From the NCBI GenBank assembly GCA_000388065.2, contig KB932202.1: 64,000 bases of DNA; one strand, 5' to 3'. The notes beneath the pieces were generated by a model. The model was not told the DNA's origin. It worked only from the letters and a program-made list of their open reading frames with translations, and did no database searches. Shown piece by piece: positions 43,202 through 49,345 of this stretch. Position numbers and translations under genes: made by a program. Source of the DNA: Fonticula alba ATCC 38817 (taxonomy: Eukaryota; Protista; Nucleariida). Numbering within the stretch: the first letter of the stretch is position 1; every line of letters starts with the position of its first letter.

Positions 43202-43996
43202 ATGAAGCCCACCAAGGTGGCGAAGCCCAGCGACAAGTCCGCTGCAAAGGCCAAGAAGGCTGCCCCGCCTGCTGGTAAGGACGCCAAGATTGACGGGTTC
43301 TTGGATGACATCTTCAAGAGCGTCTCCTCCAAGGCCAAGCCTCAGGCAACAGCGCAGCCCACCCCCGGCACGAATGATCTCGATGCCTTCCTCGATGCTG
43401 AGGACCCCGAGGAGGGCGTCGAGCTGACCGATGCCGAGAAGAAGGCCAAGAAGATGCTGATCGCTCGGAGTCTTTCTAGGATCTCCTCCGGGACAAAGGA
43501 AAGCGCGGAGACCTTGCTGAAGAAGGCCACCGGGAGTAAGACCGACAAGACCGGTCCTGATGACGATGGGTTTGCCGACAGTCGCGGTAGCCGTCAGCAA
43601 GGTGCGTTTGTGTGGGTGTGGGTGGGTGTGTCCGTGTGTGTGTGTCACTCTTTTGGAGGGCTGACAACCATGGCCAGGCCATTCTGCAATGGTGGTAGGC
43701 TAACATCTCGCTGTGGCTCACTTCTCACCCTTTCTCCTCGATCCCCTCGGCGATGTACACACACGCACACATGCATACATATAGGACGTTCCTTCACCGA
43801 GGATGGCTATCCGATTTACACTCCCGACGAGCTTGGCCTCGGCAAGGGCGGTGGTACGCTCGCATGACATACTTCGCGTCATTTATTGCGCAATGCAGAG
43901 CACCCATACGCCGACACACACATACACACACCGCCCACTGACCGGTTGAACCCAGACACCGAGGACTGTCCGATCGACTGCGATTGCTGCTTCTAG
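43202..43996 (+). CDS. DUF1764-family eukaryotic protein (3 exons)
   Basis: Exons 43202-43601, 43785-43853, 43956-43996 give a Lys-rich protein with LDDIF, DDDGFADSRG, FTEDGYPIYTPDELGLGKGGDTEDCPIDCDCCF*, the characteristic DUF1764 C-terminus. Confidence 0.85.
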
Positions 43997-44271
43997 GCCA
44001 CTTCCGGGTGGCCAACTGTCTCGCGCTTCCAGGGACCCACAAACTTGCCAGCCAGCACAAACACACCACAACAGAACAAACAATACCCTCTACAGGTGAC
44101 ATGGCATGTTGGATTGGGCATGTGGTAAAGCCACCGCTGACGCTCCTGGCCCGGTTATCGTGGCACAGGATCGCCCGAAGCACACCATGCCCAATGGTGC
44201 ATGAGAGGAGCGGGGGGGGGGGGGGGGAACAAGGAAACGGACAAGTAGGCGGGTGGGGGATGGAGGGTGCT

Positions 44272-46188
44272 CTAGACATCAGCTGGATTGCCCAAGACAC
44301 TGGTCCGCCAGCGCCAGCCCCCGATGTGCAAAGACCGCATGAGGATTTGCCGTCGCCGATGAACATGTCCACGGGACATGCTGGCCTCGATGTATGCGCT
44401 GTCCAGCAGGCGGAAGCCACGAGCACGGAGGAGCTCCAAGTCCACGGTTGGCATTGGTGGCTTCTCGGGGGAATATCGAACAAAGTGCCCGTCAATCATG
44501 GTGTCGAGCAGCATGTCCAGGGCCCGGTACAGGCGAACCAGATTGGCACGACTGACTGGCAGTCGTGTGGGCCGGCGGTATCGCGGGTCGGCTGTGGCAT
44601 TGTCCGGCTTCTGATTCGGCATGCCCGGAGGTCCGACCGGTGGTGGCGCATAGGAGCCGGCGTGTGCGCCGGGCAGTGGCGGCGGTGGGGCCGGGTACCA
44701 CCGGTCGCCGCTGCCAGTCGCCAAGTCCGGATAGAGGGGACGTGTGTGCCCGGCAAACCGGGGGTCCGGCGAATGGACGGCCGGAGATTCGTGTCCTCTG
44801 GGGTGGTATGGCTGGTGTTGAGGATGTGGCATTCCACCAGGGGGCCCTTCGTGGCGTGGATGGGGCGGAAGGCGGCTCCCAGCCAGGTCGTCATGGCCTC
44901 CGGGGCTGGTCCACTGGTGGGAGGTATCCCAGGGGACGCTATCCTCCGGCCGCGAGGGCGGCTGCTGGGAGTGGCCATACTCCTGCGGCGGTGCCCCGTA
45001 TCCTGGAGGTGGTGGGCGAATAGAGAGACTGGAGGTGCTTGGGCCAACAAGTCCCGATGGACTGGGATCAATGTGGCCACCATAGCCGGATGCCAGGGGC
45101 GCTGGCGGCGCAGGATACCCCGGCATCGGGGTGGGATAGCTGTAGTGGCCCGGTGCCGCGACGTGGCCCGGCTGTCCCGGAACCGGCTGGTGGCCAACAA
45201 CATAGCCTGACCCTGAGGAGGGCAGCCCGCCGGGGTAGCTCGATCCTGAAGGGGGCTGTTGCTCGGGGTATGGGCCACTGGCTCGGAAGCCCGGGGAGCC
45301 GCGCAAGCGCGGCGGGATGCTGGCCCCCATCAGGGGGAATGCCCCGGACCATGCCAGAGTCCGGGCCACGGCGATGGGCATGCCCGTTTGGTTCATGAGA
45401 AACTCGGACATGGCGGCCTCGGCGCTGTCCTCGATGTCGATGACATTCTCCAGGAGGACGACCGCCTCGTGGAAGACGGCGATCATGGCCAGGGCACTGC
45501 GGGACTTGTGGTAGGAAAAGAGGCCAAAGGAGAAGAGGCTGGACTTGACATAGGGGGCCAGAGCAGCGGCATCGTAGGCCACGGCCTGGGTTAGTTCGTT
45601 GAGCCCGACGCGGTCCCAGCGACCCCCGTCCCAATAAAGATCCAGAATGTCCAGTGGCCACTTGCCGACGACCGCGATGCGCGTGGCCAGATTGGCGCAA
45701 CTGTGGAAGGCGTCCAGCGCGCTACGGGTGTAGGAGACGGCCAGGGAGGAGAAGAGGATCCCATTGAAGGCCACGATGACCGTCAGCACCCGGAATCCGT
45801 CGGTATCCACCTGGACATCACCGAGGCCGACTGTGGTGAAGACGTAGCCCACATAGTAGGCGGTGGTGATGATGCTGACCGGGTCGCCGGTGCTGCTGTT
45901 TCGAACCACATTGTCGAGGGAGAAGAAAACGAAGGTCCAGCTGAGCCAGAGCAGGGCCGACCAGACAATCAGAATCAACATCAATAGGAAGGGCGCAATG
46001 ACGGACAGCCCGCGTCGGCCAAAGAGGTCGGGCAGCCTGGAGGCCATCCACACGCGCGACAATGAGGACCAAAGTAGCAACAGTAGATAGCCCACCACTG
46101 CGGGCCGGGTGTTGGATAGAACCGTCAGGACGATGTCGACATTGACCACGACCACCATGATGGCCCCGAGGATGCCCAGCCAGAGCAT
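44272..46188 (-). CDS. Prokaryotic-type potassium-channel-family protein (Ion_trans_2 pore) with a large low-complexity insertion; intronless, ~638 aa
   Basis: ATG at 46188 (MLWLGILG) to stop at 44272. Hydrophobic helices flank a pore helix and filter (AYYVGYVFTTVGLGD), followed by an inner helix (FRVLTVIVAFNGILFSSLAVSY). The upstream ORF-track extension is only a (GAA)n repeat. Confidence 0.8.
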   Translation of the reverse strand: MLWLGILGAIMVVVVNVDIVLTVLSNTRPAVVGYLLLLLWSSLSRVWMASRLPDLFGRRGLSVIAPFLLMLILIVWSALLWLSWTFVFFSLDNVVRNSSTGDPVSIITTAYYVGYVFTTVGLGDVQVDTDGFRVLTVIVAFNGILFSSLAVSYTRSALDAFHSCANLATRIAVVGKWPLDILDLYWDGGRWDRVGLNELTQAVAYDAAALAPYVKSSLFSFGLFSYHKSRSALAMIAVFHEAVVLLENVIDIEDSAEAAMSEFLMNQTGMPIAVARTLAWSGAFPLMGASIPPRLRGSPGFRASGPYPEQQPPSGSSYPGGLPSSGSGYVVGHQPVPGQPGHVAAPGHYSYPTPMPGYPAPPAPLASGYGGHIDPSPSGLVGPSTSSLSIRPPPPGYGAPPQEYGHSQQPPSRPEDSVPWDTSHQWTSPGGHDDLAGSRLPPHPRHEGPPGGMPHPQHQPYHPRGHESPAVHSPDPRFAGHTRPLYPDLATGSGDRWYPAPPPPLPGAHAGSYAPPPVGPPGMPNQKPDNATADPRYRRPTRLPVSRANLVRLYRALDMLLDTMIDGHFVRYSPEKPPMPTVDLELLRARGFRLLDSAYIEASMSRGHVHRRRQILMRSLHIGGWRWRTSVLGNPADV

Positions 46189-46281
46189 GGTTGTGGTCTG
46201 CTTCGGTTGCTGCGATGAGTTGTCCGTCCTTTGGGCCTTCTTCTCCTCCTCCCCCCTCGCCTCCCTGTGGTTTGTGTTTCT

Positions 46282-46340
46282 CTTCTTCTTCTTCTTCTTC
46301 TTCTTCTTCTTCTTCTTCTTCTTCTTCTTCTTCTTCTTCT
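46282..46340. repeat. (CTT)n/(GAA)n trinucleotide microsatellite, ~19 copies
   Basis: Perfect tandem repeat ~95 nt upstream of the channel ATG. Confidence 0.9.
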
Positions 46341-48060
46341 TTCCTGATGCCTTCGTGCAACGAAGGGGATGGGCCTGGCGGACACCAAGGGGAGACAAAC
46401 GCCTACGAGCACCGGGCCAAAGCCATCACGCGATGAACAATCTCGCGGGAGGGCTGGTGCCGACCGAGTGCACGGCAGGAGGAGGCGACAGGCGAGCGGG
46501 GAGGCGAATGAGCACAAGGGGGCAACGTGAGGGCGACGCAAGGCCTTTATAGGGGGGGGGGGAGTGAGAAGGGGAGGTGGCGAGTTGCTTCGATTGCTCT
46601 CTAGGGGCATGCATGGTTTTCATTTTGAGAGGCATTTTCATGCGGGCATCAGGAGCAGGGGGCACATTGGTAGGAGAGGCATGTGCCCGCGTGCGGAGAG
46701 GCACGAAAGGGAAGGGCAATCAAACCCGTGGTGCAATTGTGGGTCAACTTGGCCTGCGCGGCCCGACCCCCGGGATGATTAAGGGTGAAGGGTGTGTCCT
46801 CCCGATCACCACCAGGCACACCGAGTCCAAGGGCGGGGAATTTGGCCCAGGAAACAGGCGCGGCATGGGAAAAGGACCTGCGCCGGTTTCCCTGGGGACC
46901 GCCCTCGCCCCCCCCCGCACAAGGCACGATAGTCTCTGGCTTATCTCGCGGAAAGAGTGCTCTCGTCGGTTAAGGGCCTGCGGTTCTGGATGTGTCACCC
47001 GGTGGCCTGATCAGAGTTCGAATAGTATTACAGATCGGGTGATCCGGCCCGGAACCATAAGTTGGCAATTCGCTCGGGGCCGAAAAACCATTGGGCTGGG
47101 GAGCTTCATCGGCCCAGGGTGGGGGAGGAACCCGTATTGGGTGCTTGGGCAGCATGCCGCTGCTCTCTCTCTCATTTCATGGCAGCACATGAACCCAGCA
47201 ACAAAGGGGCCTTTAAATATTTGACTCAACATATGCGTATTGGCTGTGACCCGTGGCCGGAGAGGCTGGCCTCCTGGGGTGGACTTTGGCTGTTTGTGTG
47301 TGTTTCTTCCGCGATCTTTTCAATCGCGCAGACGGCGGGGGAGGGGCGGGATGCGGAAGAACGCATGTATGTGGAGTACATGGCTGTCTTGGGCACGCTG
47401 TCGGATGGCAAGGGATGTGCCTGCCCTGTGTGCGTTGTGGTCGCCAGTTCTCCCAGCTCTGGCCTAGTTTCTTTTTTTTTTTTCAAGAGATCCCTCCACC
47501 GCCTGGAGCGACTGTGGAGGCTAGGCGCCGGAGAGGCCCCGGTCCCCTTCCTGGCGGCATGCGGGGGGCCAGTTCTCCCGCCCAGAGAGGGTCGAGATCC
47601 GATGGGCGCCAGGCGTCATGCTCGGTCGGTGCTGGGGGGCGGGGGGGATGCGCAGCCCCCCGCAGTAGGGCACTAGAACGGGGGGAGTGCGGGCGACAGG
47701 GGCGCTGCTCCGGCCTCATGGGAGGCGGGGGGGGGGGANNNNNNNNNNNNNNNNNNNNNNNNNNNNNNNNNNNNNNNNNNNNNNNNNNNNNNNNNNNNNN
47801 NNNNNNNNNNCGGAAGAGAGCTCTGGTGGGCTTGGGCACTGGGGGGGGGTGTGTGTGTGGGGGGGGGGGGGAGGAGGGGGCAGACGGGCCGCTGGGGGAT
47901 GTGACGCCACCGGCTGGCCTCCCGGGGGTCATACTGTTGGGTGTGCCGTGGTGCGGTCTATAAGAAAAACCGGCCCCCTCGCCCTTCCATCGGAGCTCTC
48001 TCTCTCTAATCGCAGTTTGATATTTTTTTGTCGCTGTGAATAGTTTCCGTGTTCTTCAAA

Positions 48061-49345
48061 ATGTCCACCGAGCTTGCTTGCGTCTACGCTTCCCTCATCC
48101 TCCACGACAGCGGTCTTGAGGTCACCGTACGTTTACCCCTCCACCCTCCTCCCCCTCTCTCTGTCTCTCGTTCTGCTTCGGTCGCCCCTCTGCCTGTTGT
48201 TCCTTTCTCCTCCACGCCGCCGTCCCTCTGCCGCCCTCCCAGTTGAGGTGAATCCCCCCCCCGCTCCTGCTCCTTCTCCAGCCTGTCTCTTTCTCTGGTC
48301 GATGTCCGCGCGTGCGCTTGGACGTCTTTTCCCGTGCTCTCCCCTTCCCGCCCCTCGCTTGAGCGGTGGCGACTGCGGGTCGCAGCCCGGGGGAGACATC
48401 TTCGATGTTCGCGGGGCATGCGTACGCCCAACGCGCGCATGCCTGTGCCCTGGTGCTCCGGCAAAAGGGGCAGGCAGCTCCTGATCCTCACTGCACCGGT
48501 CTCCCCTCCTCCTCCTCTGTGCGGCGCCACTGTGCGCGTTCCACGTGCGCCACCCCCCCGGTAGGGGAGGAGGAGGAGGAGGAGGAGGCCGTACTTTGAG
48601 TCGGATCACCCTGCCACACCTCATCATCACCGGCTACAAGCAGGAGGGGAATTCACCGCTTCTCTGAGCGTGGCTTCCTCCAGGGCGGGCACCGTGGAGG
48701 GGGCGGCAGGGGGTATCCCCCTCCCCCTGGCCGGGGGGGGGCCACACAACACTTCGTCAATCTTTCCGCATCTCCTCTGCATGGGCTACCCCACCCTGTC
48801 CTTGGAGTCGGATGCAGAAAGGAAATCCCGCATCCGATGCCCCCTCCCCACTCTCTCTCCTTTCCTCGCGTGCCATTTCTCACCCCTTTTGCTGTGTTCC
48901 TGCCCTCCTCCCTCCGCACATGCACCCACACACAGGCCGACAAGATCGTCGACCTGACCACCGCTGCTGGTGTCACCATTGAGCCTATCTGGGCCACCCT
49001 TTTCGCCTCCGCCCTCCAGGGCCACAACGTCACTGATCTCCTGTCCGCTGCCGGTTCCGTCGGTGGTGGTGCTGCCGCTGCCCCCGTCGCTGCCGCCGGT
49101 GGTGCCGCTGCCGCCGCTGAGGAGAAGAAGGAGGAGAAGGTCGAGTCCGACGAGTCCGATGAGGATATGGGCTTCGGTACGTCGCCCCACTCTCTCCGCG
49201 CACACGCGCTCATGCTTCCTCCCTCCTTGTCTTTCTCTCCCCTCCTCCTCCCCCTCATGTCCTTATCTGTCTTGCTGACCGCCCCCGCCTCTCCCATCCG
49301 AATCGTCTCTCTCCTCCCCCCCCACGCGCAGGTCTCTTCGACTAA
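48061..49345 (+). CDS. RPLP1: 60S acidic ribosomal protein P1 (3 exons)
   Basis: Exons 48061-48126, 48936-49176, 49332-49345 give [22 protein letters not shown]...[13 protein letters not shown]...[23 protein letters not shown]. Confidence 0.95.

What the first reader, a model, noticed from the sequence alone, without database searches (positions are those of the whole stretch)
44272..46188. Intronless bacterial-type ion channel gene in an intron-rich eukaryotic locus: candidate horizontal transfer
Seen in sequence: a 638-aa ORF with no introns, whereas most neighbouring genes have several. It has N-terminal hydrophobic helices, a pore segment and a cytoplasmic tail. Recalled knowledge, not searched: the whole layout matches a widespread family of ~330-aa prokaryotic 'potassium channel family' proteins rather than Kv, K2P or TOK channels. 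Matching segments include VDIVLTVL, APFLLMLILIVWSALLWLSWTFVF, YYVGYVFTTVGLGD, GKWPLDILDLYWDG, AVFHEAVVLL and the C-terminal PPMPTVDLELLRARG...RRRQILM...GGWRW. Inference: a bacterium-to-eukaryote transfer, plausibly from prey in a phagotrophic host, now embedded among native genes.
Basis: partly seen in the sequence, partly recalled or inferred. Interest (0 to 1): 0.75.

Follow-up and report, generated by a model that had tools for sequence, protein, structure and literature searches.

The report
Bacterial-type potassium channel, inherited not recent
This amoeba gene encodes a single-pore potassium-channel-like protein from a mostly bacterial family, but its closest relatives are genes of early-branching fungi and other eukaryotes, so it is an old resident gene and not a recent capture from eaten bacteria.

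Summary
A 638-aa intronless ORF lies on the minus strand at 44272-46188. It has an Ion_trans_2 pore with filter TTVGLGD. Its N part (res 2-269) and C tail (res ~547-634) align collinearly with an unnamed family of ~330-350-aa "potassium channel family proteins". A ~295-aa Pro/Gly-rich disordered insert splits the cytoplasmic domain. The family is overwhelmingly bacterial, found in at least 12 phyla.

The recent-transfer reading does not hold. No bacterial protein exceeds about 30-37% identity. The best hit, P0004, lies on a eukaryotic contig beside an intron-split V-ATPase B gene. A mixture-model ML tree places the gene (99/98 support) in a 14-row clade. That clade holds Spizellomyces (Chytridiomycota) and Paraphysoderma (Blastocladiomycota) genes, which carry introns, and other contigs with eukaryotic neighbours. 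Placement survives removal of P0004. GC and GC3 equal those of neighbouring native genes. The gene shares a 20-kb gap-free stretch with Torus, SacI-homology and DUF1764 genes.

One ancient bacterial origin for the eukaryotic clade is plausible, but the tree does not resolve it (AU p 0.19). The all-helical cytoplasmic domain has no solved counterpart.

The scan had already noted this same stretch twice.

The parts
44272..46188 (-). Complete intronless CDS, 638 aa plus stop
   Evidence: ORF list and sequence. The N terminus and C terminus both align with the ends of the family, so no exon is missing.
46117..46185 (-). N-terminal hydrophobic helix (res 2-24) carrying the family's conserved G8, D18 and T22
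   Evidence: KD profile. AlphaFold helix H2-24 with pLDDT above 95. Conserved columns.
46042..46098 (-). Second helix (res 31-49), weakly hydrophobic. It could be membrane-spanning or interfacial; this is undecided.
   Evidence: AlphaFold H31-49. KD maximum 1.5.
45925..46029 (-). Outer pore helix M1 (res 54-88) with the family's conserved W76, W81 and W84
   Evidence: Pfam Ion_trans_2 starts at res 79.
45817..45873 (-). Pore helix (res 106-118) and selectivity filter T119-V-G-L-G-D124
   Evidence: Pfam Ion_trans_2. Alignment with the TOK filter TIGLGD and the CNG-type filter TVGYGD. Y111, G114, T119, G121, G123 and D124 are conserved.
45667..45801 (-). Inner helix M2 and its cytoplasmic extension (res 130-174), with conserved G143
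   Evidence: AlphaFold H130-174. The pore superposes on KirBac3.1 at Z 8.7, rmsd 2.1 A over 88 residues.
45439..45666 (-). First half of the all-helical cytoplasmic domain (res 175-250), with motifs VGKWPLDILDLYWDG and AVFHEAVVLL
   Evidence: hhalign against the family. pLDDT 81-97 by 10-residue block over res 171-250.
44551..45438 (-). Lineage-specific insert (res ~251-546). Composition is Pro 25%, Gly 13%, Ser 10%. The core 285-516 is predicted disordered. It holds PPGY (394) and LYPDL (485).
   Evidence: Absent from all 94 aligned relatives. pLDDT below 50. Composition and motifs. No tandem repeat. Codon periodicity is weak. No consensus splice donor at its 5' edge.
44275..44550 (-). Second half of the cytoplasmic domain (res 547-638), with motifs PPMPTVDLELLRARG, RRRQILM and GGWRW
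   Evidence: hhalign prob 93.8 against family columns 257-339. pLDDT 76-96 by 10-residue block over res 541-630; the last block, 631-638, is 64. P577, L587, G591, R613, G624, W625 and W627 are conserved.
46281..46341 (-). (GAA)20 microsatellite in the probable 5' leader, 93 nt upstream of the ATG
   Evidence: Tandem Repeats Finder. Sequence.

Best explanation
The gene is a resident, long-inherited eukaryotic member of an unnamed family of single-pore, KcsA/Kir-like channel subunits. The family is otherwise almost entirely bacterial. Each subunit has one or two N-terminal helices, an M1-pore helix-filter-M2 module and an all-helical cytoplasmic domain of about 180 residues. By analogy with every solved channel of this pore type, four subunits should form a cation pore. 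The TVGLGD filter suggests potassium selectivity. The cytoplasmic domain hangs directly on M2, so it is the likely gate controller, responding to an unknown signal. In this lineage a disordered Pro/Gly-rich loop of about 295 residues has been inserted between two helices of that domain without disturbing its predicted fold. The loop may serve trafficking or protein docking. In evolution, the gene belongs to a eukaryote-only subclade shared with chytrid and blastoclad fungi and several uncultured eukaryotes. The most economical history is one old acquisition from bacteria by an early ancestor of these lineages, followed by vertical descent and many losses. Shown here: the ORF, the family membership, the collinear fold, the eukaryotic clade and the host-like composition. 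Inferred: tetramer formation, K+ selectivity, gating by the cytoplasmic domain, the role of the insert, and the direction and date of the ancient transfer.
For: Pfam Ion_trans_2 hit. Exhaustive phmmer against 1.84 billion representatives gave 915 relatives, nearly all 320-390 aa, matching res 1-250 at 24-37% identity. Only the protein itself scored at or below 1e-30. Both halves align collinearly with the family profile. The AlphaFold model of the natural 638-aa protein superposes over res 1-638 on a 346-aa bacterial family representative, with TM 0.89, 337 residues aligned and rmsd 2.3 A. 27 of 36 family-conserved columns are kept, including the filter, G143 and the C-terminal GW.W. The pore resembles KirBac3.1, NaK and GIRK2. 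The family is bacterial in breadth: 148 GTDB genomes were confirmed with a single motif, and the 80 kept span 12 phyla. Named members are Georgenia, Salinimicrobium and Thermodesulfobacteriota. The eukaryotic clade: FastTree gives 99, IQ-TREE LG+C20+F+G4 gives 99/98, and the tree without P0004 gives 97. Its members include Spizellomyces punctatus XP_016609636.1, Spizellomyces sp. 'palustris' and Paraphysoderma sedebokerense KAI9142727.1. The fungal genes are multi-exon and flanked by UQ_con, LETM1, p450 and HisRS genes. P0004 sits beside a V-ATPase B gene split into at least 4 pieces. P0082 sits beside a eukaryotic-type ABCG half transporter. P0183 and P0099 share the gene order channel-Metallophos-Brr6_like. 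The query and P0004 share a 2-residue insertion after W-D-G. Gene GC is 0.64 and GC3 0.75, against 0.60-0.65 and 0.67-0.77 for neighbouring coding stretches. It lies on the gap-free stretch 27674-47738 with Torus, Syja_N and DUF1764 genes.
Against: The window's organism is not disclosed to me. Vertical descent from an ancestor shared with fungi is therefore an inference from the gene tree, not a comparison with a species tree. The branches of the query and P0004 are long (about 1.5 changes per site). The backbone among bacterial groups is unresolved. Several clade members (P0101, P0065, P0113, P0076, P0012) have no decisive context. No member of the family has been characterised in anything I could find, so selectivity and gating are inferred. 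The family motif HLAYPVLHYFH is not kept in the query.
Confidence: 0.75

Rival explanations
1. Recent horizontal transfer from a bacterium (for example prey) directly into this host lineage.
For: The family is overwhelmingly bacterial. The gene has no intron while its neighbours do. The host is said to be an amoeba.
Against: No bacterial relative exceeds about 30-37% identity, and nothing but the protein itself scores at or below 1e-30 among 1.84 billion representatives. The gene groups with eukaryotic genes at 99/98 support, and still does when its nearest neighbour is removed. GC and GC3 are those of the host. A 295-aa eukaryote-style disordered insert has had time to arise.
Confidence: 0.04
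2. The eukaryotic clade arose by several transfers: either independent captures from one unsampled bacterial group, or eukaryote-to-eukaryote or virus-mediated spread. On this reading there was no single ancient capture followed by vertical descent.
For: The eukaryotic distribution is very patchy. Only a handful of eukaryotic sequences appear among 915 relatives, and the large Atlas clusters are all bacterial. Inside the clade the order of branches is only moderately supported. The P0183 contig is compact, intron-poor and carries F-box and DNA-methylase genes, as some giant viruses do.
Against: A scan of 2.9 million viral contigs found no relative. The fungal members have many introns, and native neighbours differ in each genome. 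Chytrid and blastoclad sequences fall in one clade together.
Confidence: 0.12
3. The family predates the split between bacteria and eukaryotes, or was present in the last eukaryotic common ancestor, and has been lost from most eukaryotes. No transfer is needed.
For: The AU test does not reject a tree in which all bacterial sequences form one clan apart from the eukaryotes (p 0.19).
Against: This requires very many independent losses. Only zoosporic fungi and a few uncultured eukaryotes are seen against at least 12 bacterial phyla. With the distant P0171 as outgroup, the ML tree nests the eukaryotes inside bacterial diversity, though weakly.
Confidence: 0.06
4. Bacterial contamination or a chimeric scaffold join.
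For: There is an N gap 1.5 kb upstream of the gene, at 47739-47810. Read support could not be tested.
Against: The gene lies within 20 kb of gap-free sequence with intron-bearing eukaryotic genes. The DUF1764 gene ends about 400 bp from its stop codon. Composition is identical to the neighbours. Its relatives are eukaryotic. Its own scaffold is 3.9 Mb.
Confidence: 0.02
5. All or part of the 'insert' is an unspliced in-frame intron. The real protein would then be about 340-380 aa, like its relatives.
For: Removing res ~251-546 restores the family's normal length and architecture. Three-base periodicity in the insert is weak (chi-square p 0.065), like the non-coding flanks (p about 0.15), against 6e-26 for the N part. 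Other frames of this stretch are also open.
Against: None of the GT sites at the 5' edge resembles the donor seen in the neighbouring intron, GTGCGT followed by a CTAAC branch site and TAG. At about 800-860 nt it would be far longer than that 183-nt intron. A Pro-rich coding stretch with C-rich third positions also gives flat periodicity.
Confidence: 0.1

Closest known systems
Unnamed bacterial family annotated 'potassium channel family protein' (~320-390 aa; for example Georgenia halotolerans MDD9207696.1)
   Same: Collinear over the whole length: N-terminal helix with D..T(T)L, M1, pore helix, T-x-G-x-G-D filter, M2, helical cytoplasmic domain, and C-terminal PPxP...RRxxL...GWxW. The predicted fold superposes at TM 0.89.
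   Different: Only 24-37% identical. The HLAYPVLHYFH motif is lost. The filter has V where the family has L. A ~295-aa disordered insert lies in the cytoplasmic domain. The host is a eukaryote.
Eukaryotic subclade of the same family: Spizellomyces punctatus SPPG_03395 (XP_016609636.1), Paraphysoderma sedebokerense KAI9142727.1, and metagenomic P0004
   Same: Same clade at 99/98 support. The W-[ND]-G motif is shared across the clade. The 2-residue WDGxxWD indel is shared with P0004 only.
   Different: The fungal genes have several introns and no long insert, at 334-387 aa. This gene and P0004 are intronless. Identity is only 22-27%.
KirBac / Kir inward rectifiers
   Same: The best structural match of the pore module is KirBac3.1 at Z 8.7, rmsd 2.1 A over 88 residues. 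Both have a two-helix pore with a cytoplasmic domain of similar size attached to M2.
   Different: No match to the Kir family by sequence. The cytoplasmic domain is all-helical, not the beta-rich Kir domain.
KcsA / NaK / MthK-type prokaryotic two-helix channels
   Same: M1-P-M2 pore. The NaK pore aligns at Z 7.7.
   Different: Extra N-terminal helices are present. There is no RCK domain. The cytoplasmic domain has no convincing solved counterpart: best VIA Z 7.5 to generic helical repeats, Foldseek E 0.7 or worse.
Fungal TOK and animal K2P channels
   Same: The G-L-G-D filter variant is as in TOK/K2P pore loops. The weak best PDB sequence hit is TOK, E 0.002.
   Different: One pore domain per subunit, not two, and no 8-TM or 4-TM/2P layout.

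Membership tests
Tetrameric cation-channel pore superfamily (Pfam Ion_trans_2, PF07885) | Profile match above the curated cut-off | tested here: met
   40.1 bits against a cut-off of 22.5, res 79-158.
Tetrameric cation-channel pore superfamily (Pfam Ion_trans_2, PF07885) | Pore helix followed by a T-x-G-x-G-D type selectivity filter between two membrane helices | tested here: met
   T119-V-G-L-G-D124 lies between H54-88 and H130-174. The pore superposes on KirBac3.1 and NaK.
Tetrameric cation-channel pore superfamily (Pfam Ion_trans_2, PF07885) | Tetramer that conducts K+ or other cations | not testable with these tools
   Needs expression and electrophysiology or flux assays.
Unnamed ~330-aa 'potassium channel family protein' family (mostly bacterial) | Collinear match over the full length of the family, both N and C parts | tested here: met
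   hhalign prob 99.9 for the N part and 93.8 for the C part. Shape match TM 0.89 over res 1-638.
Unnamed ~330-aa 'potassium channel family protein' family (mostly bacterial) | Conserved residues of the family | tested here: met
   27 of 36 columns with at least 80% conservation are kept, including the C-terminal R613, G624, W625 and W627.
Unnamed ~330-aa 'potassium channel family protein' family (mostly bacterial) | HLAYPVLHYFH motif in the cytoplasmic domain | tested here: not met
   The query has S217/L218 where the family has Y/P. The motif is also absent from many other members, so it marks a subgroup and not the whole family.
Eukaryotic subclade (Spizellomyces, Paraphysoderma, uncultured eukaryotes) | Strongly supported grouping in an ML tree that is robust to removal of the nearest long branch | tested here: met
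   99/98, 97 without P0004, and 99 in FastTree on 132 rows.
Eukaryotic subclade (Spizellomyces, Paraphysoderma, uncultured eukaryotes) | All members are encoded in eukaryotic genomes | tested here: inconclusive
   Shown for the query, P0004, P0117/P0182, P0115 and P0082, and probable for P0183 and P0099. P0101, P0065, P0113, P0076 and P0012 lack decisive context.
Recent bacterium-to-host horizontal transfer | Nested within a bacterial clade, with a close bacterial relative | tested here: not met
   The closest relatives are eukaryotic. Bacterial identity is at most about 30-37%.
Recent bacterium-to-host horizontal transfer | Absent from other eukaryotes | tested here: not met
   Present in two fungal phyla and in uncultured eukaryotes.
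Recent bacterium-to-host horizontal transfer | Composition unlike the host genome | tested here: not met
   GC 0.64 and GC3 0.75, within the range of neighbouring genes.
Kir/KirBac | Kir-type sequence and a beta-rich cytoplasmic domain | tested here: not met
   No Kir family hit. The cytoplasmic domain is all-helical.
K2P / TOK | Two pore domains in one subunit | tested here: not met
   A single Ion_trans_2 stretch and a single filter.

The most novel reading that the evidence does not exclude
A whole family of channels with a previously undescribed all-helical cytoplasmic gating domain was captured once from bacteria by an early ancestor of fungi and their amoeboid relatives. It survives only in zoosporic fungi, this amoeba and a few uncultured protists. 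Here a long disordered loop with PPxY and YPxL-type motifs has been added, linking a bacterial-style channel to eukaryotic membrane trafficking.
Probability: 0.35. Interest if true: 0.5.

Novelty: new member of a known kind. Interest (0 to 1): 0.33.

Why it matters
The finding removes one candidate from the list of recent prey-to-predator gene transfers in this genome. It shows how such candidates mislead when the eukaryotic relatives are few and unannotated. It also points to an uncharacterised channel family that is widespread in bacteria and rare in eukaryotes. Its cytoplasmic domain has no solved counterpart. Members from early-branching fungi and this amoeba would be a tractable entry point for asking what signal gates these channels. 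They could also help ask how old bacterial genes were kept in the lineage leading to fungi.

Tried and rejected
1. The word-index protein search with the N part, with a 42-row alignment and with the 15-row clade alignment gave few useful hits. The exhaustive search was needed.

2. NCBIfam has no model for the query or for family members.

A 9-row alignment of closer bacterial members worked, but it samples only the HLAYP[VI]LH subgroup.

4. The viral contig scan found no relatives.

5. The 132-row mixture-model tree did not finish in two attempts. I replaced it with FastTree plus a 48-row careful tree.

6. Foldseek against the PDB gave only weak pore hits, because of the disordered insert.

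7. The cytoplasmic domain folded alone (pLDDT 96.6) gave only generic helical-repeat matches.

8. Literature searches for the fungal locus tag, for chytrid or Fonticula channels and for HGT returned nothing relevant.

Expression, splicing and contiguity by reads are therefore untested.

Each part was searched by reference, and the natural full-length protein was used for alignment and folding.

Full report
OBSERVATION

The minus strand carries an ORF from the ATG at 46188 to the stop at 44272-44274, 638 aa. The frame stays open upstream to 46398, but only through a (GAA)20 microsatellite at 46281-46341. I take that stretch as leader sequence.

Pfam places an Ion_trans_2 pore domain at res 79-158 (E 3e-10, 40 bits, cut-off 22.5). 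The filter reads T-T-V-G-L-G-D. NCBIfam has no model for the protein. PDB sequences give only weak pore matches to TOK, a CNG-type channel and K2P. Hydropathy and the AlphaFold model give helices at 2-24, 31-49, 54-88 (M1), 106-118 (pore helix) and 130-174 (M2 and its extension).

THE FAMILY

An exhaustive phmmer search of 1.84 billion cluster representatives used res 1-300 as query. It found 915 relatives at E 1e-3 or better and 318 at 1e-10 or better. Only the protein itself scored at or below 1e-30. The relatives are nearly all 320-390 aa and match res 1-250 at 24-37% identity.

So that recollection was accurate. Profile comparison aligns res 2-269 with family columns 7-276 (prob 99.9, E 4e-37). 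It aligns the C tail, res ~547-634, with columns 257-339 (prob 93.8, E 1.7e-7). The stretch between them, res ~251-546, is therefore an insertion relative to every one of 94 aligned relatives.

The natural 638-aa protein, folded with that alignment, is confident over most of res 1-250 and 547-630. Block-mean pLDDT there is 81-98 and 76-96 respectively. It is disordered at 285-516, with pLDDT below 50. The model superposes across the insert onto a 346-aa bacterial family representative of the ESM Atlas, with TM 0.89, 337 residues aligned and rmsd 2.3 A. The query keeps 27 of the family's 36 best-conserved columns. These include the filter, G143 in M2 and the C-terminal R613/G624/W625/W627. The HLAYPVLHYFH motif of one large bacterial subgroup is not kept.

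WHO HAS THE FAMILY

The family is overwhelmingly bacterial.
- Named members include Georgenia, Salinimicrobium and a Thermodesulfobacteriota MAG.
- Contigs of P0001 and P0007 are plainly bacterial.
- The large Atlas clusters are 83-100% Bacteria.
- A GTDB scan with the single motif [RQH]HLAYP[VI]LH confirmed 148 genomes. The 80 kept span 12 phyla: Pseudomonadota 22, Bacteroidota 21, Actinomycetota 19, and nine others.

No Pfam or NCBIfam model covers the cytoplasmic part in any member I tested.

WHERE THIS GENE SITS

The best hit, P0004 (382 aa, E 1.7e-29), lies on a metagenomic contig. Its neighbour is a eukaryotic V-ATPase subunit B gene split into at least four pieces (E 5e-82 to eukaryotic subunit B). 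A CDI domain gene and a split subtilase gene are also present.

FastTree on 132 full-length rows joined the query to P0004 (support 100) inside a 12-row clade (support 99). A cluster look-up showed that this clade contains Spizellomyces sp. 'palustris' TPX72683.1, S. punctatus XP_016609636.1 (Chytridiomycota) and Paraphysoderma sedebokerense KAI9142727.1 (Blastocladiomycota).

A careful IQ-TREE run (LG+C20+F+G4 by PMSF, 48 rows, 339 columns) gave query+P0004 support of 100/99. The 14-row clade received 99/98. With P0004 and the longest rows removed, the query still joined the fungal-containing clade (SH-aLRT 97). So the placement is not an attraction between two long branches. The query and P0004 also share a two-residue insertion after W-D-G.

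The two fungal genes are broken into several exons and lie among ordinary eukaryotic genes: UQ_con, LETM1, p450, Urb2, HORMA and HisRS. Other clade members also have eukaryotic neighbours:
- P0082 lies beside a full-length ABCG-type half transporter (E 1e-80 to ABCG2).
- P0183 and P0099 share the gene order channel-Metallophos-Brr6_like.
- Five short-contig members remain undecided.

IS IT FOREIGN TO THIS GENOME?

No sign of it.
- The gene lies in a gap-free stretch, 27674-47738, together with a Torus-domain gene, a SacI-homology gene and DUF1764.
- DUF1764 has a canonical intron (GTGCGT...CTAAC...TAG, 43602-43784). Its last coding exon ends about 400 bp from the channel's stop codon.
- GC (0.64) and GC3 (0.75) fall within the range of the neighbours.
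- The scaffold is 3.9 Mb.
- RPLP1 (48049-49180) lies beyond a 72-N gap.

ORIGIN OF THE EUKARYOTIC CLADE

The backbone among bacterial groups is unresolved. Holding all bacterial rows together as one clan, apart from the eukaryotes and the distant outgroup P0171, costs 9.9 log-likelihood units and is not rejected (AU p 0.19). The tree therefore does not show the direction of any transfer.

The distribution is a handful of eukaryotes against hundreds of bacterial clusters in at least 12 phyla. That makes one old bacterial-to-eukaryote capture the most economical history. Multiple captures, eukaryote-to-eukaryote spread, or an ancestral eukaryotic gene with massive loss are not excluded. A viral vector has no support: no relative was found in 2.9 million viral contigs.

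I could not test this.

THE INSERT

Res ~251-546 are Pro 25%, Gly 13% and Ser 10% (composition measured on res 301-545), with His and Tyr enriched. There is no tandem repeat, one PPGY (394) and one LYPDL (485). An earlier first-reader note pointed to the same motifs.

The insert's three-base periodicity is weak (p 0.065), like the flanks. Other frames are also open there. An unspliced in-frame intron therefore cannot be excluded from sequence alone. Against that reading, none of the GT sites at its 5' edge resembles the local donor consensus, and it would be about four times the length of the neighbouring intron. A Pro-rich coding stretch with C-rich third positions would also flatten the periodicity. 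I put the intron reading at about 0.1.

HOW IT PROBABLY WORKS

The pore module superposes on KirBac3.1 (Z 8.7, rmsd 2.1 A, 88 residues), NaK, GIRK2 and other tetrameric channels. The filter TVGLGD is close to the K+ signature.

I folded the cytoplasmic domain alone from the Paraphysoderma member (pLDDT 96.6, pTM 0.92). It is an all-helical bundle with no convincing solved counterpart. The best VIA Z is 7.5, to generic helical repeats, which is below the level the tool regards as meaningful for helical proteins. Foldseek E-values are 0.7 or worse. It is not an RCK, cyclic-nucleotide-binding or Kir-type domain. A 229-aa bacterial Atlas cluster matches this domain alone.

My working model is a tetrameric K+-selective pore whose inner helix continues into this helical domain, which gates the pore in response to an unknown signal. 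The disordered loop would be a lineage-specific docking or trafficking appendage. All of this is inference from homology. I found no experimental work on any member.

VERDICT

"Bacterial-type" is right as a description of the family. The gene is a new member of an uncharacterised but recognisable channel family and sits in a small eukaryotic subclade. Interest is moderate to low. The HGT claim falls, but the family and its unknown gating domain are worth a note.

PROCEDURE NOTES

The parts were searched by reference, and the natural protein was used for alignment and folding.

Noticed in passing
window 46281-46341: A perfect (GAA)20 / (TTC)20 microsatellite lies 93 nt upstream of the channel's ATG, in frame with it. 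It makes a spurious poly-Lys extension of the ORF to 46398.
   Followed up: partly
L011:6001-11291 and L095:1606-4473: Two soil-metagenome contigs (GC about 41%) share the gene order channel - Metallophos phosphatase - Brr6_like nuclear-envelope protein. Both are compact and apparently intron-poor. L011 also carries F-box and DNA-methylase genes. The source is an unidentified eukaryote, or less likely a giant virus.
   Followed up: partly
L005:2477-4164 (contig of P0004): The same 382-aa channel gene was assembled in four independent bioreactor or environmental metagenomes. It sits next to an intron-split V-ATPase B gene. This uncultured eukaryote is the closest known relative of the window's gene.
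   Followed up: partly
ESM Atlas cluster, row 4: A cluster of 87 bacterial 229-aa proteins matches only the cytoplasmic helical domain (query res 130-638, TM 0.82). The domain may therefore also exist without a pore.
   Followed up: no
window 47739-47810: A 72-N assembly gap lies between the channel gene and RPLP1 (48049-49180, + strand, two exons seen). Thirteen N runs occur in the window in all.
   Followed up: no
window 43602-43784: The DUF1764 intron shows the local splice signals: donor GTGCGT, a CTAAC branch-like site and acceptor TAG, 183 nt. It is GT-repeat rich.
   Followed up: partly
window 44496-45278 (-) and 43984-45210 (+): Long open frames of 260 and 408 aa overlap the insert in other frames and on the other strand. 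This reflects its A/T-poor composition, so ORF length alone is weak evidence of coding in this stretch.
   Followed up: partly
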